Shown piece by piece: positions 3,305 to 58,470 of a stretch of 64,000 nucleotides of DNA (its first letter is position 1; every line of letters begins with the position of its first letter). Made by a program: the position numbers and the translations under genes. Source of the stretch: Octopus bimaculoides (Eukaryota); NCBI RefSeq assembly GCF_001194135.2, contig NC_068984.1:82495270-82559269 (forward strand). The letters run 5' to 3'. The notes under the pieces are model-generated. The model was not told where the DNA came from and did no database searches. It worked only from the letters and a program-made list of their open reading frames with translations.

Positions 3305-6300
3305 GTAACTTCTAATTGTTATATAAAATGTTTATAACCTATTGTGACACCATCTTCCTTCACTCTCTGTCTTACTGCCTCATTTTTCTGACATTTAAGC
3401 TTTCAATTTAACACATTAATTTTCTAGAGAAACAACCCCCTTTGAAACTTGGGGTGTTACACCCCAAGTTAAATGTTGGAAACCAGTATGGAATTTAAAG
3501 ATGGTTTTTACTCGATTATCCTTCACTTCCAGTTTACATTTTTACAATTACATTCATTAGTGTTGGTCGTTAACAAAAATGTTATTTGAATTCTAGCATA
3601 ACACTAGTTACACTAATAATAATAATAATAATAATAATAGATCGCCACCCTAGCTATGTTGATCAATTTATTTCTGGAAAAAATACTCCAATTTTTCTGT
3701 TTTATGGTTGGGGAAGTTTAATGTTAAGAAGGACATCTGCACAATTGTCAGCTCAACCTATACTGTTAATTACAAATTCAACTTAAGGTGTGTAGTTTCT
3801 AATTCTTAGTAATGTCTATAAAATAGATTCTTATATTCACACAAGTGTGTCATCAGTATTTGAATTAATCCTATGTGCTGGATGTGTTTTATTGTTTTGG
3901 GAGATTTTAAAAGTAAAATCAACCTCAGAATATAGAGACATGTATCCGGATACACAAAAGCCCTTATCTAACAACCCAGTGTGTCTACCATTGACTATTT
4001 TTTTCATATATATACTATCATTAAACAAATTTTTAACATTAGTATGATATTGTAAACATTTGGAGAATGTCGTCAATTTAATTGAACCTGGCATTTGACC
4101 AGTACATATTTAATCAGTTGTGGAAGATTGAAATATAAAATCATTCAAACAAAGTTCCTTAGGATTTGGACCCACTATACATAGGGACATACCAAAGCAT
4201 ATTTTAAATGTGTTCTTAAACAATTTCTGCAATTAGCTGTATAACATATATTGAGATTACAATTTTGGTGCTTTAAAGTTGTAATATTCCTTCCATCAGT
4301 GCCTAGCAGCATTGCTTTCCTGCGAGCTATGTACAAATGTTTAGCAGAACCTATTTCAGTTTGTCACTTTTAATCTTTTCCTTGCTTGTATAACATTTTC
4401 AAGACTGTAAGCTTTTATTTTGTCTAATTTCAGTTGCATCAACTGTTTAATCAGGCTCATAATTACCGGATGTCTGTACAGAGAGATAGGGCCCTTGATC
4501 ATATACTTAAGGTATGTAAACTTTTGTTGTTCAGTCCTGGGTCTCTCATGGTACATTAGACCTTGTAATCCAAGGCTATCCAATCAAGACCAACTCTTTT
4601 TTTTCCAGGTATAGTGTGATTAGAAATTATCTAACCTGCTTAAGTTATCCAGATTTAAATGATAAAATGGCTTCTTTTCTTTAGCTCTTATTCTCCTTTT
4701 CTCTTGTGTGTATATATTTACTTATGTTAATTGATTCCTTTTAACCCACAGGGTAAGGTGATGGCTTCCATGTTCTATGAAGTCAGCACTCGGACCAGCT
4801 GTTCCTTTGGTGCCGCCATGCAAAGACTTGGTGGGTCAGTGATCACATTCAATGAAGCTACTTCCTCAGTACAGAAGGGTGAAACTCTTGAAGACACAGT
4901 GCAGACCATGTCTGGTTATGCTGATGTTATTGTGTTACGACATCCCAAGCCTGGTGCAGTTATGAAAGCTGCTCAGCATTGTCGCAAACCTGTGATCAAT
5001 GCAGGAGATGGCACTGGAGAACATCCTACTCAAGCACTACTCGATGTTTTTACCATCCGAGAAGAAATTGGTACTGTCAATGGCCTTACTGTAAGTATAC
5101 TTTATGTTGCAAATACAATAATCCTGCTTTCTTTGTTGAAATGGTCAGATATTTTGGAAAGTTTCGTGAATATCCTGAAGATTAATCTGACTTGTTTCTG
5201 GCATTGTACAAAAAAAAAATCATTATTGCCATGACATAACAATCGAATAGTGTTGTTTAATCCCAGATCAACCTTGATTGAGCAAACCTATGATCGAAGG
5301 CATTCCTTATTGGCTTGCCAGTTGAATAGTAGAAATCTGTGTGCAGTAATAAATGTATTGCTACATTGTATTAAATTCTGATGTGGGTGATGAAATATAT
5401 AAGAAGTACCATTAACATACTATGGTTGATTCAGTTGGACTAACTTTTCATCACAGCAAAAATTGTGGGCTGTACTAATGTGAAAAGTTATTAGAATTGT
5501 GAGTAGGATTGGAGGTGAATGAAACAAGAGTCCTAGTTAACCCATTTTGTAATGGGGAGATAAAGAGAGATTGTGGTTAATTACTACTTTTTGAGTACTG
5601 TGTGCCTATGATCTGAATTCAAAATAAGTACTAATAATGTACTAGATGGTTGATTCAACAGTTCTCTTGTTGTTTTCTTGCATAAACAAAGCGCAATGCC
5701 TCAGATTTAGGGCTTAACTAAATACCACAAGGCATTTTGTCTGCCAGTCCATCACCTTCCTGGAATAAGCAATTATTTTAACTTTTTCATTACTAACTCG
5801 ACTGTAGCCAGCTGAGAAATTTTCTGGCATATGTTACCAACCCAGCCAAGATAACTTTGTCATATTTAAATGAGAATTTTAGTGCAAATCTTGTTAGTAC
5901 ATTCATGAACACGTGATTTTATTATGTAAGCAATTTTGGTGCACTGTATATATCTGAGTGCTGCAAATTTTTGGAGAAATTTTTTTCCACTTCAATTTTC
6001 TAAAATGTTTCACTATGGCTGAAAATTTAAAATAAAATTAGCTGTTTTATGAAACCAATCTAAATGCACAATTATTTTAGAATTTAATTGAAACACATAA
6101 GAGATGTATTTTGGTTAGAAATGTATTGATAAATAGTAGTTAGTTATTGCTAGTTTGCTGTAGTTGGTTGTAGGGGAAAAGTCTTCAGAGATAAAGAACC
6201 TTTTGTCCTTTAGTCACCCAACCAATATCCTGGCATTACTTTCTGAACTTCTTGATACTGTTCATGTTGCCACACTTGCAACTTAACTTCAGTGAAATTA

Positions 6301-30775: not shown

Positions 30776-31982
30776 ACGGGCTTTTCAGTTTCCATCTACC
30801 AAATCCATTCACAAGGCTTTGGTCGGCCCGAGNNNNNNNNNNGCCTAGTACTTATTCTATCGGTCTCTTTTTGCCGAACCGCTAAGTTACGGGGACGTAA
30901 ACACACCAACATCGGTTGTCAAGCGATGTTGGGGGGACAAACACATACATATATATATATATATATATACGACGGGCTTTTCAGTTTCCATCTACCAAAT
31001 CCATTCACAAGGCTTTGGTCGGCCCGAGGCTATGGTAGAAGACACTTGCCCAAGGTGCCACGCAGTGGGACTGAACCCAGAACCATGTGGTTGGTAAGCA
31101 AGCTATTTACCACACAGCCACACCTGCTATAATAATAATAAGTAATAATAATTTTAAAAAAAGACGAACTCTTGACTGACTCACCTCTCTCAATGATATT
31201 TTTGCTTTATATCGTATATCATTTCCATCACGCGTGAAGACAGGATGCCGTTTGTCCCTGATGACAAACACAACATCTGCTGGTATATTATAAGGGGTCT
31301 GATCTCCTTCTTTTGGAAAAGTGATCTTCGTACCGGCTTTCCAACCGGGTTTGATATCTACTGTTAAGATTTTCTCTTCTCTGACTTGTTTATTCGACTG
31401 GACCATTATCGTTCGTGTGATTTTCATTTTCTTCGTGCAACCCGTGCAGATATCCTCAAGACTGACAGGTAGATCCTTGACAATCGGTTTGTCTTGTTCC
31501 TTCTGTCGCCGGAACGACGGTCCACCCATATTAAAACCATGTCTACCGAAGTGCGAGAATGGCTCATCCACATCCATATCATCGCCAACAAAGCCGCCAG
31601 ATTGGTGCTGCGATCTTTGATCACCTGGGAATGAACTAAACATGAACGAATTGAACGGGCCTTCATCCCCGAAAAACATCCTGAACGTTTCGTGCGGGTC
31701 ACAGTGGAATGAGTAAGAGAAGTTTGCACCTTGTTCCCCACCCATACCACCGGGAACATTGCCCCTAAGTCCTTCTTCTCCATAAGAATCGAATACTTTC
31801 CTTTTTTCTTTGTCGGACAGGATTTCATATGCTTCGGCTACCTCTTTGAACTTTTCTTCGGCTCCAGGAGATTTGTTTTTGTCCGGATGGTATTTCAGAG
31901 CCATTTTCCGATAGGCTTTCCTGATGTCATCTTCCGTTGCATTTTTACTTATACCTAAGATTTTGTAATAATCTTTCCCCAT
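22799..31982 (-). CDS. DNAJB1/4/5: DnaJ homolog subfamily B (Hsp40, DNAJB1/4/5 type), 342 aa: complement(join(22799..23029,31185..31982))
   Basis: J domain [10 protein letters not shown]...YHPDKNK (HPD motif), G/F region with [11 protein letters not shown], no CXXCXGXG zinc finger, and C-terminal substrate-binding domains ([17 protein letters not shown]...[13 protein letters not shown]). Phase-0 intron with donor GTGAGT (31184) and acceptor ttttttag (23030). No signal peptide. Confidence 0.97.
23255..23358. repeat. (AG)n-rich microsatellite
   Basis: Interrupted GA repeat read directly; it generates the spurious RERERE ORFs. Confidence 0.9.
23955..24400 (+). mobile_element. SINE with RTE-like 3' tail
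   Basis: tRNA-like head (agctatgtggttaagaa...gggttcag), body ...gcatccagctgtagaa..., tail catgccagcatggaaaacagatagtaaacgatgatgatg. A related copy lies at 61760-61985. Confidence 0.75.
25532..25964. repeat. Imperfect fold-back centred on (TA)n, in DNAJB intron
   Basis: Paired arms: ggttatgtatgtatg..ggcttcagtgac / gtcactgaagccatacatacatacatacataacc; gtgattgacag / ctgtcaatcac; gtgtttgatggggtgtg / cacaccccatcaaacac. Confidence 0.8.
26245..26628. mobile_element. Fold-back/MITE-like element (about 380 bp, contains a 19-N gap), in DNAJB intron
   Basis: Outer arms agaagcgcacc..caagaaaat / attttcttg..ggtgcgcttct. Middle arms gaaaatgggaaatatatccaaaataaatgaag / cttcatttattctggatatatttcccattttc. Inner arms ggcactcgcgaatataaacaaacatg / catgtttgtttatattcgcgagtgcc. 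Confidence 0.82.
29041..29576. other. Assembly gap (N run); other gaps at 26340-26358, 30833-30842, 51488-51587, 57396-57405, 59454-59887, 62457-62532
   Basis: N characters in the sequence; several gaps abut (TA)n tracts. Confidence 0.99.
30548..31126 (-). mobile_element. Full-length tRNA-derived SINE with internal (TA)n, about 60 nt inside the DNAJB intron 5' end
   Basis: The - strand reads gtggctgtgtggtaaatagc...ggttctgggttcagtcccactgcgtggcaccttgggcaagtg...ccagcatggccgcagtcaaatgactgaaac. An internal segment is duplicated across a 10-N gap (see rejected). Confidence 0.85.
31185..31982 (-). CDS. DNAJB1/4/5: DNAJB exon 1 coding part (266 codons)
   Basis: The ORF-track entry 31107..31982 runs past donor GAG|GTGAGT after ...KISLRE. 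Confidence 0.97.
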
Positions 31983-36715: not shown

Positions 36716-38327
36716 TTAAACTGTTGAAAACATGAATAGAAGCCTCGTATGAGTAAATAATGTCCTTGAGCATTTATGGTAGAATAATAACCGAATAGTT
36801 TCAAGCCAGATATCACAAATTTCTTCATTTGTTGCTTGGCCATAATTCACATCAGAGCTAATTTCATTTACTTGTATCTCATCTTCTTCTTCAATTTTGT
36901 CATTATGTGCATCTGGCACATTTACCTCAAGGCCAGACAAAACATCCTGTAAGCGAGAGTTTAAGAGGCTAGGTTCTACAGTCTGTCCATGAGGAGCAAT
37001 TCCACAACATTCAAAGGCATGCTTTATAGTTTCTTTATTTAAAGTGGCAACGGCTTGGGTCACAAAGTTCACTATCACTTGATAAGAAGGTCTTTTGCAA
37101 TAACCTTTATTTGTAAACTCCTTTTTGTCATTTGAAAACCAATTCTCCCATTCAGTACGAAGGGCTTTCTTGAAAGGACCAATAATTGATACATCTAACG
37201 GCTGCAAGTAAGATGTTGTTTTAGGAGGTATAAGTTTGAGAATTGTATTCCTACGTTTGAACACTTCTGTTTTCTTGTGCACTGAGCATTCACACTGAAT
37301 TTTGAGCATGGAATAGTTGTGCTGTTCTCTGCCCAAACACTTTGTCAGCCCACAGCTACATGAGTTCATATGTGATTGATCCCTTGTTGGAGACTGTTAA
37401 GTAAATATTCTTTAGGACCTTGATTTTAAGCACGTTTTTTCAATCCTTTAAGGATAATCATTGTTTTCAACACCTTTCCTGCAGCATTAACACACAACAC
37501 AGCAGTAAAACAAGCTTTGGTAGCACCACGGTGGCTAACATCTACATTTGTATTGCCAACAAAGTCTATGGTTGTTGAACTCAACATGTCAACGTATACA
37601 GGTGTTTCATCCATATTATAAATCTGGTCAGCATCCTTATCTGCTGTTAATACTGGAATGCTATCTTGATGGTCACTGGCGATTTGTGCCTTTTCTCCGA
37701 GTGTTTTATTGTCTGCTTGACCAACATGTGTAATCTTTCTCACAGTCAGTTTATTCCGTTTCATGAAATTGAAAATCCATTTATCAGAACATCTAAAGCT
37801 GTTCATTTCAATTCCGAACCTTTTTACCAATTCAAAAGTATATTCCCGTAAACGGCGATAATTTGCAATTATATTGTTTGCACGTTGAACAACAATCCAT
37901 TGCAAGAGTTCAATCTCTAGATCTCTATGTGCTGGTCTTATACCTCCAACAATTGATCTGCGCCTCTTGTCTGACATATTGATTAACTCAGTTACTTTTG
38001 TACACCATTCTCTCAATTGTCTTCTATCGATACCAAAGTCTCTTGACGCAGCAGATAAATTACCAGAATGTTCTTTTACTCGTTTAATAGCACTCAATTT
38101 TTCACTAATGGTATATGATTGTTGAACAAATTTTGATATATTTTCTTTCGACTCCATTATTGGGAATTAAGATCCTTTGAATTTATCTACAGACGTAGAC
38201 CAAATGAACTTCTAAATAGAATGCAAACAATAATACTATGTTTCAACTTTTAACCACAAATAACCGCCCATCCAAATAAACGTCCGTGGGCGATCTAATG
38301 GATGGGCGGATTTTCGGAAAACCCCGG
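36716..38327 (-). mobile_element. pogo/Tigger-family DNA transposon, disrupted transposase
   Basis: HTH-psq/CENP-B-like N-terminus (EKLSAIKRVKE...FRCSDKWIFNFMKRN), DDE_1 motifs NMDETP and QPLDV, and frameshifts/stops between ORFs 37426..38157 and 36716..37369. One end TA|CCGGGGTTTTCCGAAAATCCGCCC at 38327; no matching second TIR was seen. Confidence 0.9.
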
Positions 38328-38466: not shown

Positions 38467-39600
38467 TTAATGAGAGCCATGTATCTGGTGCGATCCAGCT
38501 AGTGCAGATACATTCGGTTTCAACTTGTTGACTTTTAGCCACAAGTCCCTTCGTTGTATCACATCCAATTCAATTCTTTTATGGGAAAGTAAAGTTCCAG
38601 TATGACTAAAACCAGATTCAACCAGGTACGAGGAAGGGAAGGCAAGCAAAAGTAATTTCAGATGTTTCCGCAGATTGGAGTAGGAATTCAATATACTTTG
38701 ATGTTACCACAAACCTTTGCCATTACGGCAATATCACATTGTGGCGTCATTATCATTTTGTAATTCTATCAGTTCCTCCCGAACGTCGTCCTCACAATCG
38801 ACTGCATCAACCTCAAATGGAGTGCTATACCAATTTGGAATATTCAGTGCAATAACATCTTCAAATCACTCCATCATGTCATCGTGCAATGATTGTAAAT
38901 AGTTGCGATATGTAGTTAAATCCTCATCAACCAATTCATCTTTCAAAGAGTCAAGTTGTAGAAATTGATGGAATGTTAGCCTTATACAGCACCAATTTTT
39001 AAATGAAAAGGTAGTGGTAAATGATTTACAATCAATGAGAGTTTTTCTGTTTCCTTGCAATAACATATACGAATCATTTAATTTTGGAAATATATCACAA
39101 AGAAAAAAGATATCGCACCTTACAACCATCAATGAAGCGGATAGTGGAGTATCTTCATAGAAATATATGATTATATGAAATAGTTCAACAAAGCGTAAAA
39201 TACAGTTTCCTTTTGACATCCACCACACTTCGGTATGATATAAGAGTTTAGTATAGTCCTCATCATTTCCCAGACAGAGTTGACGGAAAATTCGATCAGA
39301 CAAAGGACTGGACTTCAATTTGTTCACAGTCTTGATAACTAACTGTAGCGCATCATTCAATCTACCATTCATATTGTTTGCCATTAAATGCTGCTGGTAT
39401 GCCAAGCAATGAACAGTTAGTATCTGGTGGGAAATTTCACACTTTAGGAGAGATGAAAAACCTCTGTATCTTCCTATTATTGAAGGGGCCCCATCAGATG
39501 CACAGGCAAGAATATTACTGAGTGGGATATTATGTTCAAAAAGGATAGACTTGAGAGTGTGAAAAATAGTTGCGCCTTTTGAATCAATGTATTTGATATC
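38467..39600 (-). mobile_element. hAT (Buster/Charlie, FAM200/ZBED5-like) transposase fragment
   Basis: ACASDGAP, QQHL...NKLKSSPLSDRIFRQLC, LLYHTEVWWMSKG and dimerisation domain AFPSSYLVESGFS; several stops/frameshifts. Confidence 0.88.
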
Positions 39601-47184: not shown

Positions 47185-49625
47185 GAAATGGTCGTAGTAC
47201 AGCGTCAATTAAAAGAGAGAGAGAAAATATCTTCCTCTTACACTAAAGCTTGAAAAAGTGAAACTGGTACGTTAAACTCGAATAACGTCTAGTCCTAGAA
47301 ACACAGGCGTGAAAAAATGGCATAAAAAAAAACATTATGGGTCCAGAAGAATGTTCTCGATCAGAACTGAGCCGGCTCACAAAGCAAAACACGTCTTTTA
47401 ACAGTGTCAAGCGGTTATTCTTTATACATTTTCTTGTAATTAAAGGCTAAAATTTTGTTAGGCCGTATTATAAACAACAGGAAGTTAGCCCCTTTCACTT
47501 TTCCTCTTCCTCCCCTTCATCCCACTTCAACGGTCTCAAAAAATGGGTCGGTGGTGATTAATTTCTGTAGATCATTATGAAAATGCACTTTAATTATAGT
47601 AATTAACAGTAAAATATTTTTGCATAAAACAAAACTATTAGAAATAAAAATCTATAATCGAAACAATGCTAATATTTTAGTAAACAATTGATGGCAATTA
47701 ATAATAAACAAAAAGCTGATAGCTAACGCCAGTGAATAATAGATTTTAGAATAAGGTTAAATATATGTCAATTTCTATCAGTCCTTAGCTTTGCGCAGAG
47801 GCGGTACCATGGCCAATGAGGTAAATCCGAGGCGTGGTTATTGCTAGTTGAAAACTATTCCCAATACCCCGCGTATAGCATCCTTCGAGGTGCTGTGCGC
47901 AATTTTTGCGCACCTCTAAGGAGGTGTAGAAGTCAATATAATAACAGATTGTATTTTAGCTAGGAAGTCTCAGAGATGACAATTCAGGTAAATCTGTAAC
48001 GAAGTTGTCGTTTGTTTTAGAATTTGTTTACTTGTGTCCCTACTAATTTACGCATGGCCGGTTATGCAGTATAACAGAATTGGCTGTTATATCTAGCACA
48101 TCGAATAACCATACTAAAGGCCTCTCGATTGTAAAAAGTGGAGTGTCATTATTTATTACAATCCGGTGGATCAGTACAATACAGATAAATGCATTTCATT
48201 AGCTGGTAACACAACCGCATTTTAATTTCGACTTCCAGATTATTGGAATACTGATTAATTTGCGTAGATGAAAAGGGTTATACGTCATCTGAAGTGATTT
48301 CTGGAACTATGCCAACGTATGCAATCATCATTACTATTATGGATGTTGTGAAGCGAAGTGATGGTTCCGAACAGAAGTACACCGGTGCATACGTCCGCAG
48401 GAGAAATGCTTTTTAATCTTCATCGGGATTTGAATACGGCGTAAGGCTAAATAACGTAAGGCATATTGTTCGAAGCCTTATCAGTTCCATCATTCACTGC
48501 TGGCTTTCTGGACGTGGGTATACTTTACTATAGCGACTGGAAAACAAACGTTTTAAAATGGAAAATAAATCACCTGATTCATTTGCGTCTGTGCGAAAAC
48601 ATGTCTTTTATCAAATGTTCGTCATTTATTAAAAGTGTTTCAACCATGACTAGGAATTCAAATGTAACCATCTAGTCTTTTGTAAGAGTCTTTCAACAGT
48701 GACCTTTCCATCTTTTTTTTTTTATTTTTAAGCCAAATAGGACTAATATTAACGACGAAATATATGTATTGAAGATAAATGAAGCTGTTATTTCTAGCAT
48801 GTTGAACAGCAAGAGTACATAAACATTAACACACATAAGTTTACCATTTGAAATTGTTTTTAGCTCCAGGTCGGTTCTGATCCAGCAACCTCATGATCCA
48901 AATACACGACTACACTATCCAATGCGGGAGATTTTGACTATTTTCTGAATTATCACAATTGGAACGTAAAAAACATAAATGTAAAAATGTGGAACTCGCT
49001 TTACTAAATAATTTATTACTATTAAAGAACATATTCATGCGAAGAAAATGTTTCGGAAAATGAATATATTATTTAATATTATTAACGATAAATCATTCTT
49101 TAAAACAGTTAAATAATGAAATAGATTACCCTTCTTTCCAGGTACGTAGAAGTAACTGAAAACGAAAAGAAAGTGTGACGCCGAGATTGTATAAAATTAG
49201 GCATGGGTATCCCAAAGTGAGCGAAACGAATTTGTAAATACTTGGAAGTAGTTTTATTAAGCGTCAGTTTAATAAATTTATATCTCCCTATCTGTCTGAC
49301 TGTCTGTTTATCTATCTGTCTATTTATCTATCTATAAGCCTATCTACCTACCTATATTCTATTTATCCATCTCCATTGTCATGGAACCTCACCCCAAAAA
49401 ACAAAAACAATGTTCTCTTCTAAACACTCCTCCCCCCCAAAAAAACATCTGTTTTATATAAATGAACAAGCTGTTAGTACATTCACAACATCTTATTTGA
49501 TAAGTTCGAGAAAAGAACGAAAGCGCTAATAATAATGAAGAAATAAAAAGATTTTTTTCTAAAATTCTAACGACCTTTCTTCTCAATATTCAATTTTTGT
49601 ACATCACACCTACCACACACACACA

Positions 49626-52195: not shown

Positions 52196-54242
52196 CAGGG
52201 GTGCCCAGTACGTTGATCGCGATCTTCCGATCGATCGCAAAGGCAGTGTGGGTAGATTGCATGGCATTAAGAAAACAGACGTCAGACTATCATCCATCGC
52301 TATGAAATGTGTCACTTGATTGGCACACAGGGCAGCCAGTCTGACATCTGACCTTCTCTGACACATGCGTCACCTCGCATATGCATACAACGGTGCTAAG
52401 TGCTGCAAAACTCTCGCAAGATAGTTAGTGGGGGAGCTAGACCAAGTAAGAAACCAAAAATTTATCATTTCCATACGGAATGGGAGGAGGACTTTTTTTT
52501 TCACAATGTCATATTCGAAGTGCGTTTGCCTCATCTGCCAGTCTACCATTGTTATTCCGAAGAAGGGAAATGTGGAGCGGCATTTTCGGACCTTTCATAA
52601 AACTATGACACTGACTCCCCTCCGAAAAGTAAGCTGAGAAAGAGAAAGGTGAAGCAACTAAAATCCCAGCTGTCCGGACAGTAGTTATTTTTCACACAGC
52701 TAACTTCAAAAGCAAAGGCAACCACCGAAGCATCATTCCGGGTGAGTCACTTCATCGTTAAGAACAAAAAATCCTTCCAAGATGGAGAGATGTAAAAGAG
52801 GCATTCGTTGAAGCAGCTGACTCGTTGTTCCGAGACTTTAAAAACAAACCAGAAATACTATCTTCAATCAAAGTTCTCCAGCTATCATGAAGTACGGTTA
52901 CACGGCGCAGTGAAGCTATGGCCGAGGATTTGAGCCAGCAACTTTGGAAAGACATCGCGAACTGCGAGTGTTTTCCACTGCAGTTGGACGAGTCTACAGA
53001 GTGACACGGCCCAGTTGTGCATTTTTATTCGGATGGTGTTTACCGATATAACTGCAAAAGAGGGGCTGTTAACAGTACTGCCCTTGAAAGAACACAAGCG
53101 AGGAAAGGACATATTTTAGTCTTCCAAAAACTTTATCGAGAAAATTCAGCTTCCAGTGTGCAAATTGGTGTCCATCACCACGGACGGAGAGCCCACGATG
53201 GTTGGCCGGTCAAATAGATTTATTGTCAAGTGCAGAGAGTACAATGCTTTCCCGGACTTCCTCAATTACCACTGTATAATACACCAACAAGCGTTATGCA
53301 CAAAAATGCTCAACATGAAAGAGATAATGAATGTGCCAGTGAAGATCGCCTATTCTATTCGTGCCAGATCTCTTCAAAGACAGCAATTCCGAGCGCATCT
53401 GGAGAAGGCTGACTGCGACCACTTTGAGTTGTTGCTACACACTGACGTGAGACGGCTTGGTTGAGGAAAATTCCTGCAATGATTTCGAGAGCTCTGTCCG
53501 GAGATTAAGGAGATTTTCTGTGAAGTTAAACATGAAGAATACAACCAACTCTAAATGACGATTAGTGGCTGCTAGACTTAGCATTTTTAACCGATCTCAC
53601 CATGCTGAATGACTTTAGTGTAGAGCTGCAAGGAAAAGATAAAACCGTGACCAATATGATCAGCTCAGTTAATGCTTTCAAACGAAAAATGCAACATCTC
53701 TCCTCAAAGCTGCAGCGCCATGATTTGGCAAACTTAAAGAACCTCACATCAGAACTAGAGACCCAAGAGAAGGCGTGTGTGCAACTTGAAAGTGCACGCT
53801 ACACAGAGCAGATTGACAATTATCTGTCAAAGTTTAACAAACGCTTTCAAGACTTTGCTTTACTCGAGCCAGTCGCTGCATTCATGTACTACCCTTTTCG
53901 GGAAGATGCTGAGGTTGATTCACTCGCATCAAAAATTGTAACACTGCTTCATCTGAACTCTTCTAGAGTGGAGGATGAGATTTTGATACTACAGCTGAAG
54001 TCCAGGGCCCATGAACAGTTCTGGAACTTACTCACACAGGAAAAGTACCCCAACATGAGGAAATGTGCTACCTCCTTGACTGCATTATTCGGCTTCACTT
54101 ATTTATGTGAGTCAGCCTGATGATCATTTGGAAGTGTGCCTGAGGCTAGCTACCAGCAGCTACTGTCCGGACTATGCATCCCTGGCTGATTCCATCCAGT
54201 GCAAGTCATCAGAGTAAGTGTGAAAAAATGTGTGCACCCCTG
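52196..54242 (+). mobile_element. Near-full-length hAT (Charlie/SPIN, GTF2IRD2/EPM2AIP1-like) transposon, 2047 bp, transposase disrupted
   Basis: Termini CAGGGGTGC / GCACCCCTG. Peptides: BED-like FHTEWEEDFF..CVCLIC..GNVERHF, LQLDEST, SITTDG, YHCIIHQQAL, LLHTDVR, LAFLTDL...LQGKDK and LFGFTYLCESA. Multiple frameshifts/stops. Confidence 0.93.
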
Positions 54243-55739
54243 CTGTAGAGCTATGATATATGGATTCACATTATAGCACTGGAATTAGATATCTTATATT
54301 GTATGAATAGAAGGATGTCGCACAGCGTGGACTTGGATAAGCAGGTGTACACTGCAGGGTAGGAAGTAACGGAAGCACACTTATACTGCCCTAAGGTGCT
54401 GAATACCCATGATTACAGGTCGTGCAGAGAATATAGACACAAAACAAAAATATTTTTTTAAAAAATCAAGAGACCACTTGGACACGCAAGAGGAACCGAT
54501 AGTTGTAGCAACAAACTCCCATACTCACAGTATCTGTCATTACATAAAACATCACTTCGAATACATTTCAACACCCATCCTAGAACAGAATCACCATCAC
54601 ACAAAAACAACATTATAATAAACCTCTCTATTTTGTCTCCAATCCAAAATACTGCAACAACAATAACCTAACCAACCATCAAACTGTGCTGGAACGTACA
54701 CCATCGACAGTAAACGCAAAGTAATTGCAACAGTCGCAAGGTTACTGGGTTCGGCTTGCCCACCACCTCTATGGCCACCATCAGAATCCTCAGATATACA
54801 AAAATACACAGGTCAGTGGTGAGGAAGTAACGTGCCCGAAGTGTTTGATGTCCCAATACGATTCATTACTGCTCATAGGAGTGTGCATTATATTTAATGT
54901 TGACAGAGGTATAGTATAACTTATAAAAGATGGATTTGGTCTTATGACTATCTGGGTGTCGTAAGTCTACTCGATCACAGCTGGCCTGGGGCCTCACAAC
55001 TAACAATATCAGTATAAGAGCTAAAACTATTTGGTGAAAGTAAATTTTTCTTGTTAAAATCAGTGTTTATTAATCTTTATTTTACACATCTGTTTATCAA
55101 ATATCAGGAAACCACTGAGAAAACTAGTATTTGTTGATCATGCAATGACAAAAATTCAAGTACAATAAACGGTTACTAGCTAAAAATGTCGATTATAGAG
55201 AAATGGTATGTTGAGGTTGATATGTAATAGTGAAGTGTTGTTAGGAACACGTTATCTTCACTGATGAAATGTATGCGTTTTTTCTTGACACATTGTAAAT
55301 GCAGATGAAATCGTAAAAACCTCAGTTTGGAGGAGCTCATTTTACTATTCCATAAAAGATAACTTTATAAATTTTGGTTTAAAATATATTGCCTTGAAAT
55401 TATTTTTCAGTGAAAGAGGAGAGTGTAAAATAGTTACACTAAACGATAAAAAATTTATTCTTCATAATATATTTTAAGTATTTGACATATTTTCTCTTTT
55501 AATTTCCATCCACGTTTTAGAAAAGTTATCATAAGGTTTCAATTCCGACACGAGCAGGAGATAAATACATATAAACAGAATAGGTTGAACCAAGTTTATT
55601 GTATGCTTCTTTGAACAGAATGTGCGCACGCGTGCATGCTTGATACATCTATACAGAAGAATTATTTTTGTCGAAAAATTAGGCATATAAAGAAGTGTTT
55701 ATTTGAAATAAAAACGGTTGAGGAATGATGGAATCGGAG

Positions 55740-57011
55740 TTAAAAGACTGCATTACATAACAATGGTCTTCCTTCAAGCTGGTTTAAGTCGATTGTAAAT
55801 GATTTGACTTCCTTCTGCCAAGTTTTTGCATTAAAGTAAAAGTAACACCCCCGTTCCCAGTCACTGCCGGTGGCATCGGGAATGACACCAGGAATTCTGG
55901 ACATCCATATTTTTTCCATTTTGTTATAACGCCATTCTCGTTTGAAGAGTTCAAACGAAGCCGCCATTTGCATCAAATCTCCAACATACACGTAAAATAG
56001 ATAAAACAATACATCATCGGGGTATCTTGAAAGCTTTACTGGAGGCAATTGCTCCTTTATTCTGTAATTGATTATGTATTCGGTGGGATTATATTGATCA
56101 ATGTTTTGTGGTTGAGCAGGAACCGGTGTCCAAGGATTTTTGAATTTGTCCAATTGACTTCCATTTTTCTGCGGTAACAATTTATTTAAATTCAGGCCAG
56201 TCAAATGCTCGTTACCTGGTGGCAAACTTCGTTTTAATTTTAAGTCTCGAAAGAAAGACGAGAGCCCAAAATCACAATCAGCATTAGTGTTTCGATTTTT
56301 TGTAGCACTGTACCTAGATTCCGGCATACTACCTCGCACATTTGGAGGAGGTTTCTTTCTACTCTTTACTGAAATTCCGTCGGTGATACTTGGATGTCCG
56401 TGTGGGAACTGCTGTACTGGTGTAACTCCTGATAACGCTGAATGATCACCAGCAAGTGAGGAAGTCGTGCCTTTTGGAGTCACATAATCGTCGAGGATAG
56501 TATTAGTGAAAGGAATTACGTCCTCCTGCTTCACTATCCACTGCCACGTTGATGCATGAGTGCTTGAATTCATCCAAGTTTGGGAAACATCGTCATAGGT
56601 ACAGTCTATTTCTCTTGAAGCATTGAATTGTGCACGTCTTTCTTGAATTTCGCGAGATGTAGTCGATTTGAACTCGGTTTTGTTTTGTTTGTGCGTTATA
56701 CTGGGTTGATGACTAACAGTTTCAGAGTCTGGTATTTTATTACATATTCTGCCACTTGATAGATCCCTGGCGATATTTAAATCTAGGTTTGGTTTATCGT
56801 CTAAAAGCGGTAACAATAGATTAGAAAATGCAGTGGAAGATTGTAGATTTGACTCGTTTTCATTCAGCTGAACATTGTCCTTATGTGTTGTAGTCCCATA
56901 TTTCACAACGTTTGAATACAGGCATGGATTGTTTGCAGTTCGTGGACGGTACGTATAATTTCCTTCTCCGAGAAACAAAGAAACATTTTCTCTGTTTTGA
57001 TTATAATTCAT
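55740..57011 (-). CDS. CNOT2: CCR4-NOT subunit 2 (CNOT2/Regena)-like protein, 423 aa, single coding exon
   Basis: C-terminal NOT box (KFKNPW..PAQPQNIDQYNPTEYIINYRIKEQLPPVKLSRYPDDVLFYLFY...MQMAASFELFKREWRYNKMEKIWMSR.PG...ERGCYFYFNAKTWQK) aligns by eye with CNOT2 KFASPW..RPQDIDFHVPSEYLTN..KLGRYGEDLLFYLYY..DWRYHKEERVWITR.PG..ERGTYYFFD. In-frame TAG 3 codons upstream of the ATG; AATAAA on - at 55698-55703. Confidence 0.9.
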   Translation of the reverse strand: MNYNQNRENVSLFLGEGNYTYRPRTANNPCLYSNVVKYGTTTHKDNVQLNENESNLQSSTAFSNLLLPLLDDKPNLDLNIARDLSSGRICNKIPDSETVSHQPSITHKQNKTEFKSTTSREIQERRAQFNASREIDCTYDDVSQTWMNSSTHASTWQWIVKQEDVIPFTNTILDDYVTPKGTTSSLAGDHSALSGVTPVQQFPHGHPSITDGISVKSRKKPPPNVRGSMPESRYSATKNRNTNADCDFGLSSFFRDLKLKRSLPPGNEHLTGLNLNKLLPQKNGSQLDKFKNPWTPVPAQPQNIDQYNPTEYIINYRIKEQLPPVKLSRYPDDVLFYLFYVYVGDLMQMAASFELFKREWRYNKMEKIWMSRIPGVIPDATGSDWERGCYFYFNAKTWQKEVKSFTIDLNQLEGRPLLCNAVF

Positions 57012-57030
57012 TTTTATCTAGGCAGATATT

Positions 57031-57240
57031 CTGGAAGCACAGCACAGTTACATCTGAATATGGCAATGCCTATAAAAGACTGTATAAACTAACCAAACTT
57101 TCAAATTTTTATAGTGCTCAAAGTTTTTACAACTTTTTTGTACAGATTTTTATTGGTCATAACCAAAGAGGAATATCAAACAGCCGACAATTTTGCAATC
57201 CGGTTTCGATTTCAGTTGAAACCAGTTACTTTTTCTTTAC
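57031..57240 (-). other. Candidate 5'-UTR intron of the CNOT2-like gene
   Basis: Acceptor ...ctgtgctgtgcttccAG at 57031, 19 nt before the ATG; donor CAG|GTAAAG at 57240. An alternative donor GACG|GTGAGT lies at 57963. Confidence 0.4.
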
Positions 57241-58299
57241 CTGGTAATGTCTTTAGATAAAGCAGGAACATAACATCCTATTTACGTACCTAAAATATTG
57301 GGCCTTCATACCAGTTTTTAAATGTTGTTGTTTGTTTAATCCCAGATCGAACAAACCTATGATCAAAGGCGTCCCAACCCGTTTTTTTTTTTTGTNNNNN
57401 NNNNNCCGTTTTTTTTTTTGTATATCCACAACTAGATTTCTCAATGTATTCACCACCTTTTTTACGAAAGGATTAGTTGCTATTTCTAGTAGGTCGTCCT
57501 CGGTCTTTTCGGTCGTACCCAGAACGCAACATCTTTCTCCATAGCCATTAGATAGAGGAAAAACACTCGTGCTTCCTGGTCAAAGGAAGGTAGCGGGGCA
57601 ATTCACACGATTGATCTGTTCTGTATGTGAGTACAGCTGTTTGATAAAAATTCAAAATTCTTAAATGTTCGGACAATGGACGAGTACGGGTAGAATGATT
57701 TCATAGTTCTCTGGGCGCATCTCAGATCGGCCCAGCTAATGGCACTTCCAGCAATGCCCACAGTGGATTCTCGTCGATGCCTAAAGTTTTTTTCTGTAAA
57801 TATCGCTCTTCCTTCGGTCGTATTGCTCGATTTGAAAGGGCTCTGAATGCCTGACAATATACCAGATACCAAACACCAGTTTGGGTTTTTGCTTCACTCA
57901 GGGCTACAGTTCTGTCAAAGGGACAAGCTGTGTGTGATGTGTATGTAGAGGGAACCCACTCACCGTCCAGGAATCTCTCGCAAATGTCGCAGCCTCGGCA
58001 TATCCTGAACCTCACCAACCATAGTATCTAGAGCCCGCTAAGCTGATGATTTTAGTGGTAGTCCGCTTGACCAATGGAACACCCCGCATTGACAAGAAGC
58101 AAATGGCAGACATTCCAATGTGATCAAACGAAAACTAGAACAAAGCATAACGATGGCGATGCAGCGTTCGCCACCATTACCCGATCTTTCAAGGATAGAT
58201 TCATTTCAGCCCAATTCCAGGCGTGACAGGATACTCTGTTCGTAGTCTCACTCCAATTCCTATCTGCACAGGTCACAGATTTTAAAGAAGGGTATAAGT

Positions 58300-58470
58300 C
58301 AAGTTTGGCAGTGAGCTGAAAGAATCGTTAACACGTCGGACAAAATATTCATCGGCATTTCTTCCGGCTTTTCATGTTATAAGTTCAAATCCTATCGAGG
58401 TAAACTTTGCCTTTCATCCCTTCGGAGTCGATAAATTAAAGTACCAGTTAAACGCCTGGTCGACGTAATT
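58300..58470 (+). mobile_element. tRNA-derived SINE
   Basis: ggcagtgagctgaaagaatcgtta...aagttcaaatcctatcgaggtaaactttgcctttcatcccttcggagtcgataaattaaagtaccag; CpG-retaining copy of the 14920/18981 family. Confidence 0.78.

What the first reader, a model, noticed from the sequence alone, without database searches (positions are those of the whole stretch)
55740..57011. Intact, intronless, strongly diverged CNOT2 (NOT-box) paralog: candidate functional retrogene of the CCR4-NOT deadenylase
Seen: a 1272-nt ORF with no stops or frameshifts, in a neighbourhood where every transposon ORF is broken. It has a poly(A) signal about 37 nt after the stop. Known: animal CNOT2 is normally a multi-exon, slowly evolving gene, and its C-terminal NOT1-anchoring region, connector and NOT box bind CNOT1 and heterodimerise with CNOT3. 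Here those modules are recognisable (DFGLSSFFRDL ~ QFGMIGLLTFI; KFKNPW ~ KFASPW; full NOT box) but heavily substituted, and the N-terminal ~240 aa is Ser/Thr/Asn-rich with no similarity I recognise. Inference: a retroposed duplicate kept under selection that could assemble a variant (for example germline-specific) CCR4-NOT complex or act as a competitor subunit.
Basis: partly seen in the sequence, partly recalled or inferred. Interest (0 to 1): 0.72.

Follow-up and report, generated by a model that had tools for sequence, protein, structure and literature searches.

The report
Ancient intronless CNOT2 paralog of cephalopods
The window holds an intact, single-exon, fast-evolving extra copy of CNOT2, a core subunit of the CCR4-NOT mRNA-decay complex; the same extra copy is kept in other octopods and in cuttlefish, so it is an old, selected, undescribed variant subunit rather than a dead retrocopy.

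Summary
Window 55740-57011 (minus strand) is an uninterrupted 423-codon ORF, the longest in the window. Its C-terminus is a CNOT2-type NOT box (Pfam 9e-26; human CNOT2 in PDB 1e-39; AF2 pLDDT above 90).

The gene is much older than a recent retrocopy. Single-exon relatives exist in a second octopodid (75% aa identity, collinear flanks), in Argonauta hians, in Sepia (Acanthosepion) pharaonis and in one more decapodiform contig. The five group together in 300/300 NJ bootstraps. Sepia also has a separate canonical CNOT2. A canonical mollusc CNOT2 gene spans 40 kb in about 15 exons.

Selection signals:
- Cuttlefish pair: dN/dS 0.20, and 0.08 in the C-terminus.
- Octopus pair: dN/dS 0.63. The CDS has only 2 in-frame indels against 31 in 1.5 kb of flanks. 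P(no stop) under neutrality is 0.002.

The CNOT1-anchor segment keeps only about 25-30% of the canonical consensus. The N-terminal 245 aa are disordered and match nothing.

Not shown here:
- expression in any tissue;
- binding to CNOT1 or CNOT3;
- a canonical CNOT2 in this particular genome;
- direct marks of retroposition.

Verdict: a conserved coleoid CNOT2 paralog, probably derived from a retrogene, and a new variant of a known family.

The parts
55740..57011 (-). Complete single-exon CDS of the CNOT2 paralog (423 aa plus TAA)
   Evidence: ORF listing and sequence. Pfam NOT2_3_5_C. PDB CNOT2 match. The protein is already present in UniRef/MetaClust as a predicted protein.
56277..57011 (-). 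N-terminal region, aa 1-245: Ser/Thr/Asn-rich and predicted disordered. It is specific to the octopod paralogs and lacks the canonical CNOT2 N-terminal motifs (LDLSEFP, EDFPALPG, KRGIQ..DG.VSNIP.GMV).
   Evidence: AF2 pLDDT below 50 over residues 11-282. hhalign E 0.55 against canonical N-termini and E 0.55 against decapodiform paralog N-termini. Conserved at 73% and 27% identity within octopods, with invariant patches such as YSNVVK.
56028..56276 (-). Diverged NOT1-anchor-like segment and connector, aa 246-328 (DFGLSSFFRDLKLK ... KFKNPW ... PQNIDQYNPTEYIINYRIKEQLPPVKLS)
   Evidence: Collinear with canonical DQFG..PW..CRPQDID..EYLTN. Identity to the canonical consensus is 29% in the anchor part and 43% in the connector, against 76-95% for canonical CNOT2 across Bilateria. 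There is a six-residue gap after the first helix. Low pLDDT as a monomer.
55776..56027 (-). NOT-box domain, aa 329-412 (RYPDDVLFYLFYVYVGD ... TIDLNQL)
   Evidence: pLDDT 89-96, with helices 332-341 and 346-357 and four strands. Foldseek top hits are CNOT2 chains. The NOT box superposes on yeast Not2 at 1.4 A and on human CNOT3 at 1.4-1.7 A. 45% identity to the canonical consensus.
55740..55775 (-). C-terminal tail, aa 413-423 (EGRPLLCNAVF) plus the stop. This tail is cut off in the sister species by a GAA to TAA change.
   Evidence: Nucleotide alignment of L001 to the window. Protein alignment.
57018..57020 (-). In-frame TAG three codons upstream of the ATG. It fixes the N-terminus unless an upstream exon is spliced in.
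   Evidence: Read from the sequence. A TTCCAG 22 nt upstream of the ATG is conserved in L001 and could be a 5'UTR splice acceptor; this was not tested.
55698..55703 (-).
   Evidence: Present in the window. It reads AATGAA at the aligned position in L001, so it is not conserved.
54901..58337 (-). Block collinear with the orthologous locus of a second octopodid (Logan SRR11869390 contig L001): CDS plus about 1.3 kb upstream and 0.8 kb downstream
   Evidence: blastn. Substitution identity is 87.4% in the CDS and 87.8% and 87.3% in the flanks. Indels: 2 in the CDS (3 and 6 nt) against 10 and 21 in the flanks.

Best explanation
The ORF is the octopodid member of an old paralog family of CNOT2 that is restricted to coleoid cephalopods. 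Most likely a processed CNOT2 mRNA was reverse-transcribed and inserted once, before octopods and decapodiforms split. Since then the copy has been kept as a protein-coding gene while evolving much faster than the nearly invariant canonical CNOT2.

Shown here:
- The gene has a single exon in five sources.
- It has a CNOT2-type NOT-box fold.
- It is under purifying selection: strongly in cuttlefish, and by protection of the reading frame in octopus.
- A canonical CNOT2 coexists with it in Sepia.

Inferred: the protein still pairs with CNOT3 through its NOT-box helices and connector, and it docks on the CNOT1 C-terminal HEAT repeats through a remodelled anchor. This would give an alternative NOT module. 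Its different disordered N-terminus lacks the canonical short motifs and would change which partners or regulators the complex meets. Such a module might be restricted to a tissue or developmental stage, but that is speculation.
For: - ORF and domain.
- Fold: AF2 NOT box with pLDDT above 90. Foldseek best hits are CNOT2 5fu6_B and 4c0d_B (6e-14), with 1.4 A rmsd to yeast Not2.
- Octopodid ortholog: P0002, 75% aa identity, on a contig collinear with the window including its flanks.
- Argonauta hians: P0006 (GAB1597619.1), 39% identity over aa 27-421. The gene range of 1143 nt equals the CDS, so it is single-exon.
- Decapodiforms: P0164, annotated 'CNOT2' in Acanthosepion pharaonis, is a single 1467-nt ORF. 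P0003 is a single ORF on an ENA contig.
- Canonical copy in Sepia: P0175, 582 aa, 56% identical to a gastropod canonical CNOT2 over 100% of its length. It lies on a different contig and appears in 62 Logan runs as contiguous CDS contigs of about 3 kb, that is, spliced transcripts.
- Canonical gene structure: the Gigantopelta gene spans 40,040 bp with about 15 tblastn exon blocks, at least 5 of them in the C-terminal 200 aa.
- Tree: paralogs monophyletic in 300/300 NJ bootstraps, and the internal topology matches the species tree. In 8 of 26 jointly diverged conserved columns the two lineages share the same derived residue.
- dN/dS: cuttlefish pair 0.20 (0.15-0.27), C-terminus 0.083. Window against Argonauta, C-terminus about 0.24 with dS saturated.
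- Octopus pair, reading frame: 2 in-frame indels in 1227 bp of CDS against 31 in 1542 bp of flanks. Expected stops 5.9, and P(no stop in 409 codons) = 0.002.
- Lineage asymmetry: polarised C-terminal changes are 4 in the window lineage and 17 in the sister lineage, so the window copy is the better conserved of the two.
Against: - No expression evidence could be secured. I could not establish whether the Logan runs carrying the paralog are RNA-seq or WGS.
- No binding data exist.
- The anchor segment that holds CNOT2 on CNOT1 is the most diverged part, at 25-31% of the canonical consensus with a six-residue gap in octopods. CNOT1 docking may therefore be lost or changed.
- Within Octopodidae dN/dS is 0.63 with an upper bound of 0.91. 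CDS substitution identity equals that of the flanks. The sister species has a nonsense change that removes 11 residues. Constraint is therefore weak or recently relaxed in at least one octopodid lineage.
- Monophyly of two long branches could be long-branch attraction. The N-termini of the octopod and decapodiform paralogs show no detectable similarity (hhalign E 0.55).
- No poly(A) tract or target-site duplication is present, so retroposition rests on intron absence alone.
- A canonical CNOT2 was not demonstrated in the window's own genome.
Confidence: 0.62

Rival explanations
1. Decoy or competitor. The paralog keeps the NOT box and connector, so it still dimerises with CNOT3 or with canonical CNOT2. 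It has lost productive anchoring to CNOT1. It would then titrate CNOT3 away from the complex or act outside CCR4-NOT.
For: The anchor-like segment is the least conserved part: 25-31% of the canonical consensus, against 43-54% for the NOT box, with a six-residue gap in octopods. The NOT-box fold is predicted confidently while the anchor is not. Published work reports that isolated NOT boxes form homo- and heterodimers (PMC4032980).
Against: The anchor is an extended peptide that folds only on CNOT1, so low monomer confidence says little. The hydrophobic pattern F-G-L-x-x-F-F and the LTGLNLN and F-x-x-PW motifs persist. In cuttlefish the whole C-terminal half, anchor included, has dN/dS 0.083, so the anchor-like segment is itself constrained.
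Confidence: 0.2
2. Two independent retrocopies, one in the octopod stem and one in the decapodiform stem, that group together only because both are long branches.
For: The Sepia paralog is closer to canonical CNOT2 (distance 0.86-0.88) than to the window paralog (0.96). The two N-termini are not alignable. The decapodiform copies still keep DG.x.x..SGMV.DQFG, which the octopod copies have lost.
Against: Monophyly in 300/300 bootstraps. Eight of 26 jointly diverged columns share the same derived residue, including non-conservative changes: A to I in RAPG, A to P in LAP, G to S in VGLL. Further shared states occur at less conserved columns: Y to W in YERG, N to T in NWRK, YF to FY. An exhaustive HMMER search of the representatives library found no such copies outside these three clusters.
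Confidence: 0.12
3. A retro-pseudogene, or a gene on its way to being lost in octopodids, whose open frame is a leftover.
For: dN/dS is 0.63 with a CI reaching 0.91. Substitution identity in the CDS equals the flanks. There is a nonsense change in the sister species. A rough split of the C-terminal changes (4 against 17) implies omega near 1 in that lineage. No expression has been shown.
Against: Under neutrality about 6 stops and about 19 frameshifting indels are expected between the two octopodids. Observed: one stop at the very end and no frameshift. Intact orthologs exist in Argonauta and in two decapodiforms, which diverged long ago. Selection is strong in cuttlefish. The window lineage itself changed little in the C-terminus.
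Confidence: 0.06
4. A DNA-level duplicate of CNOT2 (segmental or tandem) that later lost all its introns, rather than a retrogene.
For: No poly(A) remnant or target-site duplication is present, so the retroposition marks are missing.
Against: About 15 introns of the canonical gene are all absent in all five copies. Retroposition removes them in one step; serial loss would not. In Sepia the paralog and the canonical gene lie on different contigs.
Confidence: 0.08

Closest known systems
Canonical animal CNOT2 (human CNOT2 in PDB 4C0D/5FU6; Drosophila NOT2/Regena; mollusc CNOT2 such as Gigantopelta XP_041351693; Sepia pharaonis CAE1307430)
   Same: A C-terminal NOT box with the same fold. The order anchor-like segment, then connector, then NOT box is collinear. 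Many core residues are kept: F290, P293, W294, E311, Y312, R329, Y330, L335, F336, D345, Q348, E354, L355, R358, W360, R361, Y362, E366, W369, E386, G388, Y390 and F393 are invariant or nearly invariant across 27 sequences.
   Different: One exon against about 15. The protein is 423 aa against 500-600. The canonical N-terminal motifs are absent. The C-terminal 185 columns are 41-47% identical, whereas canonical proteins from mammals to molluscs are about 80-95% identical. The anchor segment is remodelled with a gap.
CNOT3 / Not3 / Not5 (the other NOT-box subunit)
   Same: The same Pfam family, PF04153, and a superposable NOT box (1.4-1.7 A).
   Different: Sequence matches are far weaker (1.5e-9 against 1e-39). 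There is no Not3 N-terminal coiled-coil domain. The paralog branches with CNOT2.
Known paralogous CCR4-NOT subunits (CNOT7/CNOT8, CNOT6/CNOT6L, yeast Not3/Not5; Arabidopsis NOT2a/NOT2b from my own knowledge)
   Same: The idea of interchangeable paralogous subunits that give several CCR4-NOT complexes (review PMC12746107).
   Different: That review lists CNOT2 as a single gene in every model organism it tabulates. This would be an animal CNOT2 paralog. It is intronless, evolves much faster than its parent, and has a replaced N-terminus.
Functional retrogenes of housekeeping genes in animals, such as testis-expressed retrocopies (general class, my own knowledge)
   Same: An intronless copy of a multi-exon, slowly evolving parent, with faster evolution and long retention.
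   Different: This copy is very old, and the retroposition marks are erased. No expression pattern is known.

Membership tests
NOT2/CNOT2 family (Pfam PF04153 NOT2_3_5_C, CNOT2 branch) | C-terminal NOT-box domain recognised by the family profile above its curated cut-off | tested here: met
   90.9 bits against a cut-off of 27, E 9e-26, profile positions 3-126 of 126.
NOT2/CNOT2 family (Pfam PF04153 NOT2_3_5_C, CNOT2 branch) | NOT-box fold: three helices followed by a bent beta-sheet | tested here: met
   AF2 pLDDT 89-96 over aa 330-410. Foldseek hits CNOT2, Not2 and CNOT3 NOT boxes at prob 1.00 and rmsd 1.4-1.7 A.
NOT2/CNOT2 family (Pfam PF04153 NOT2_3_5_C, CNOT2 branch) | CNOT2-type rather than CNOT3-type | tested here: met
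   PDB phmmer gives CNOT2 1e-39 and CNOT3 1.5e-9. No Not3 N-terminal domain. All 150 best library hits align as CNOT2-like C-termini.
NOT2/CNOT2 family (Pfam PF04153 NOT2_3_5_C, CNOT2 branch) | NOT1-anchor region and connector sequence directly upstream of the NOT box | tested here: inconclusive
   A collinear segment with residual motifs is present. It keeps only 29% (anchor) and 43% (connector) of the canonical consensus and has a six-residue gap.
NOT2/CNOT2 family (Pfam PF04153 NOT2_3_5_C, CNOT2 branch) | Physical assembly with CNOT1 C-terminal domain and CNOT3 | not testable with these tools
   No multimer prediction or experiment was available.
NOT2/CNOT2 family (Pfam PF04153 NOT2_3_5_C, CNOT2 branch) | Canonical N-terminal short motifs (LDLSEFP.L, EDFPALPG, KRGIQ..DG.VSNIP) | tested here: not met
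   Absent from the octopod paralogs. hhalign of the N-termini gives E 0.55. These motifs define canonical metazoan CNOT2, not the Pfam family.
Retrogene (processed, retroposed gene copy) | Intronless CDS where the parental gene has many introns | tested here: met
   Single ORF in the window and in L001, L002, L003 and L004. The canonical Gigantopelta gene spans 40 kb with about 15 exon blocks.
Retrogene (processed, retroposed gene copy) | A separate parental gene in the same genome at another locus | tested here: inconclusive
   Met in Sepia pharaonis: P0164 lies on a 190-kb contig and P0175 on a 2.9-Mb contig. It could not be tested for the window's genome, because no tool gives access to the rest of that genome.
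Retrogene (processed, retroposed gene copy) | Poly(A) tract remnant and flanking target-site duplications | tested here: not met
   There is no A-rich tract after the 3' end. The only bracketing direct repeat (21 nt, 81%) overlaps the stop codon and is judged a chance match. This is expected for an insertion that predates the split between octopods and decapodiforms.
Functional (selected) gene as opposed to pseudogene | Purifying selection across orthologs | tested here: met
   dN/dS is 0.20 overall and 0.083 in the C-terminus for the cuttlefish pair. The octopus pair shows a strong deficit of indels and stops. The octopodid pairwise dN/dS is only 0.63.
Functional (selected) gene as opposed to pseudogene | Transcription and translation | not testable with these tools
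   The type of the Logan runs could not be established. The contig index numbers of the cuttlefish runs resemble those of runs proven to be RNA-seq, which is only a hint.

The most novel reading that the evidence does not exclude
Coleoid cephalopods have carried a second, retrogene-derived NOT2 subunit since before octopods and squid/cuttlefish diverged. Its CNOT1 anchor is rewired and its disordered N-terminus is lineage-specific. It would build a distinct NOT module, or act as a CNOT3-titrating regulator, giving this clade an extra layer of control over deadenylation and translation. That could plausibly act in the germline, in early development or in the nervous system. It would be the first conserved CNOT2 paralog described in animals.
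Probability: 0.35. Interest if true: 0.72.

Novelty: new variant of a known kind. Interest (0 to 1): 0.52.

Why it matters
CNOT2 is one of five universally present CCR4-NOT subunits. It is treated as single-copy in all model organisms tabulated in a 2025 review (PMC12746107), and its C-terminus is almost invariant across Bilateria. A paralog retained since before octopods and decapodiforms split would be a natural experiment. It evolves many times faster than its parent, has a remodelled CNOT1 anchor, and has a replaced disordered N-terminus. It could show which parts of the NOT module are essential for assembly and which are used to recruit partners. It would also add a post-transcriptional regulator specific to cephalopods, a clade already known for unusual RNA biology. 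In practice, genome annotations currently call it 'CNOT2' or 'hypothetical protein', which hides the distinction between the two genes.

Tried and rejected
1. Expression from public assemblies.
- I looked for the SRA/ENA run numbers in the paper library. The only finding was that the neighbouring accession ERR3431204 holds Mytilus genome reads.
- The contig ends of the cuttlefish paralog contigs fall in homopolymer runs, so they do not mark transcript ends.
- No run was shared with runs that carry the spliced canonical transcript.
- Result: undecided.

2. Homology of the N-termini by profile-profile comparison, for octopod against decapodiform, octopod against canonical, and decapodiform against canonical (E 0.55, 0.55, 0.052). 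Nothing was significant.

3. Retroposition marks. The direct-repeat scan found no credible target-site duplication. The AATAAA near the stop is not conserved.

4. Synteny between the window and the Argonauta locus. Only the CDS and a U4 snRNA gene match, and their relative orientation differs. This is too weak to use.

5. The bacterial-type promoter and terminator scan gave chance-level counts and is irrelevant for a eukaryote. The tRNA scan found nothing.

The 'only CNOT2 in this genome' test therefore remains open for octopods.

7. The Boland et al. 2013 structure paper is not held, so residue-level interface mapping was not done.

8. The Biopython bootstrap timed out. I replaced it with my own NJ and Kimura-distance bootstrap.
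Full report
**1. Observation**

Window 55740-57011 on the minus strand is an uninterrupted ATG-to-TAA ORF of 423 codons. It is the longest ORF in the 64-kb window. The next real one is a 291-aa DnaJ-like ORF, and several 'long ORFs' are only runs of N. An in-frame TAG lies three codons upstream of the ATG.

The product matches Pfam NOT2_3_5_C over the whole profile (E 9e-26, aa 289-412). Its best solved relative is human CNOT2 in the NOT-module crystals 5FU6 and 4C0D (E 1e-39, aa 270-418). CNOT3 is a much weaker match (1.5e-9). An AF2 model built on a 27-sequence alignment gives pLDDT 89-96 for aa 330-410 and below 50 for aa 11-282. Foldseek returns CNOT2, Not2 and CNOT3 NOT boxes only.

**2. 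Relatives**

- A word-indexed search found one close relative, P0002 (409 aa, 74-75% identity), on Logan contig SRR11869390.
- An exhaustive HMMER scan of 1.84 billion cluster representatives added P0006 and P0003 as the only hits clearly above the canonical level. P0006 is 380 aa and 39% identical over aa 27-421. P0003 is 485 aa.
- Ordinary CNOT2 proteins match only aa ~262-421, at 44-47% identity.
- P0006 is a 'hypothetical protein' of Argonauta hians. Its gene range of 1143 nt equals its CDS.
- A profile search added P0164, annotated 'CNOT2' in Acanthosepion (Sepia) pharaonis, which is a single 1467-nt ORF.
- P0003 is a single ORF on an ENA contig next to a LINE reverse transcriptase. It is 75.6% identical in DNA to the Sepia gene.
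- The window protein itself is already in UniRef/MetaClust.

**3. A canonical gene exists beside the paralog, at least in cuttlefish**

Searching with a gastropod canonical CNOT2 retrieved P0175 from Sepia pharaonis. P0175 is also annotated 'CNOT2'. It is 582 aa, 56% identical over 100% of the query, and lies on a 2.9-Mb contig.

The exact P0175 protein is carried by about 3-kb contigs in 62 Logan runs, with the whole CDS contiguous. For a multi-exon gene this means spliced transcripts. The paralog P0164 lies on a different, 190-kb contig.

The canonical Gigantopelta gene spans 40,040 bp. tblastn splits its 547 codons into about 15 blocks, at least five of them in the C-terminal 200 residues. 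The paralog lacks all of these introns in all five sources. That is the argument for retroposition.

No poly(A) remnant or target-site duplication is left. The AATAAA 37 nt after the stop reads AATGAA in the sister species.

**4. Phylogeny**

On 185 C-terminal columns the five paralogs form one clade in 300/300 NJ bootstraps. Inside it, (window, L001) joins Argonauta, and the two decapodiforms pair, which mirrors the species tree.

Both lineages are long branches, so I also counted shared derived states. Among the 108 columns that are at least 90% conserved in 28 canonical sequences, 26 have diverged in both lineages. In 8 of these the two lineages share the same new residue, including A to I in RAPG, A to P in LAP and G to S in VGLL. 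More shared states are visible at less conserved columns: Y to W in YERG, N to T in NWRK, YF to FY.

A single origin before octopods and decapodiforms split is the better reading. Literature estimates I recall put that split at roughly 250-300 Myr. Two independent retrocopies remain possible; I give that about 0.12.

**5. Selection**

*Cuttlefish pair (P0003 and P0164).* dN/dS is 0.20 (bootstrap 0.15-0.27), 0.083 in the C-terminal half and 0.29 in the N-terminal part.

*Window against Argonauta.* About 0.37 overall and 0.24 in the C-terminus, with dS saturated.

*Octopodid pair.*
- dN/dS is 0.63 (0.44-0.91).
- Substitution identity is the same in the CDS (87.4%) and in the flanks (87.8% and 87.3%).
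- The CDS has two indels, of 3 and 6 nt. The 1542 bp of aligned flanks have 31, of which 77% are not multiples of three.
- At the flank rate about 19 frameshifting indels would be expected in the CDS.
- Simulating the 155 observed substitutions with the flank transition bias gives 5.9 expected stops and P = 0.002 for none in the first 409 codons.
- The one stop that did arise, GAA to TAA in L001, removes only the last 11 residues.

*Which lineage changed.* I polarised the amino-acid differences using Argonauta, the decapodiforms and the canonical consensus as outgroups. In the C-terminal region, 4 changes fall on the window lineage and 17 on the L001 lineage. Over the full length, with Argonauta alone as the outgroup, the split is 10 against 23 (p = 0.035). 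The high pairwise ratio therefore comes mainly from the sister species, and the window copy is the conservative one.

**6. Anatomy of the protein**

I compared each segment with the canonical consensus.

| Segment | Paralogs, identity to consensus | Canonical proteins, mammals to molluscs |
|---|---|---|
| Anchor-like (DQFG ... PW) | 25-31% | 76-95% |
| Connector | 37-63% | 80-87% |
| NOT box | 43-54% | 82-93% |

- The octopod copies have a six-residue gap after the first anchor helix. They keep F-G-L-x-x-F-F, LTGLNLN and F-x-x-PW.
- The N-terminal 245 aa are predicted disordered.
- The N-terminus lacks the canonical motifs LDLSEFP, EDFPALPG and KRGIQ..DG.VSNIP.GMV.
- It shows no significant similarity to canonical N-termini or to the decapodiform paralog N-termini.
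- It is still conserved within octopods: 27% identity to Argonauta, with invariant patches.
- The decapodiform copies still keep DG...SGMV.DQFG.

**7. Mechanism**

Shown: a selected, intronless CNOT2-type protein with an intact NOT-box fold, coexisting with a canonical CNOT2.

Inferred from the published architecture of the NOT module (PMC4032980): the paralog most likely pairs with CNOT3 and docks on CNOT1, forming an alternative NOT module whose N-terminal tail offers different contacts. In that architecture, the NOT-box helices and connector make the CNOT2-CNOT3 heterodimer, and the extended anchor ties it to CNOT1.

The heavily altered anchor keeps a decoy or titration model alive (about 0.2). 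Decay toward a pseudogene in octopodids is unlikely (about 0.06) but is the direction the L001 lineage hints at.

**8. What is known**

A 2025 review lists paralogs for CAF1, CCR4 and Not3/Not5, and shows CNOT2 as single in every tabulated model organism (PMC12746107). Full-text searches found no paper that discusses CNOT2 in cephalopods or as a retrogene parent. Plant NOT2a/NOT2b are known to me from memory only. The proteins exist in databases as 'CNOT2' or 'hypothetical protein', without recognition as a distinct clade.

**9. Limits**

- Expression is not established.
- The canonical gene was not shown in this particular genome.
- There is no multimer modelling and no residue-level interface mapping.
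- The trees are NJ trees.
- dN/dS values are pairwise Nei-Gojobori estimates.

Noticed in passing
window 47787-47924 (+); L003 15227-15362 (+): A U4 spliceosomal snRNA gene (Rfam RF00015, 118.5 bits) lies about 7.9 kb beyond the 3' end of the paralog. The Argonauta locus also has a U4 gene about 4.1 kb beyond its paralog, 98.9% identical over 87 nt. The relative orientation differs, so this could be conserved linkage or just dispersed snRNA copies.
   Followed up: partly
L004 6113-6230 (+): In Sepia pharaonis a 5S rRNA gene (Rfam 93.3 bits) lies 4.4 kb downstream of the paralog.
   Followed up: no
window 31107-31982 (-): A 291-aa single ORF with a complete DnaJ domain and a truncated DnaJ_C domain (DNAJB1/4/5-like). 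It ends in nonsense residues next to assembly gaps. It may be a second intronless copy of a housekeeping gene, or a large exon.
   Followed up: partly
window 4731-5234 (+): An ORF encoding the carbamoyl-phosphate-binding half of an aspartate carbamoyltransferase domain (OTCace_N, 1.7e-40). It is most likely an exon of the CAD gene.
   Followed up: partly
window 36716-38157 (-): A pogo/Tc5-type transposase split over two ORFs: HTH_Tnp_Tc5/CENP-B_N in 37426-38157 and DDE_1 in 36716-37369. This is a broken DNA transposon.
   Followed up: partly
window 38866-39405 (-) and 53602-54120 (+): Two ORFs of 179 and 172 aa have no Pfam hit. By eye they resemble C-terminal parts of hAT-type transposases. 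The collinearity with the sister-species contig ends at window 54901, close to the second ORF.
   Followed up: no
window 55741-55761 and 57073-57093: An imperfect 21-nt direct repeat (17/21) brackets the CDS. One copy overlaps the stop codon and the other lies 62 nt upstream of the ATG. I judged it a chance match, not a target-site duplication.
   Followed up: partly
P0175 (Sepia pharaonis canonical CNOT2), between KLP and PVKLNRY: The canonical cuttlefish CNOT2 form seen in 62 runs carries an eight-residue insertion (FHAFLQLS) in the connector just before the NOT box, relative to other animals. Annotated isoforms of 574-590 aa exist, so this is probably alternative splicing at that point.
   Followed up: no
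L002 15633-18455 (-): A 940-aa LINE ORF (Exo_endo_phos_2 plus RVT_1) lies 4 kb downstream of the decapodiform paralog on the ENA contig.
   Followed up: no
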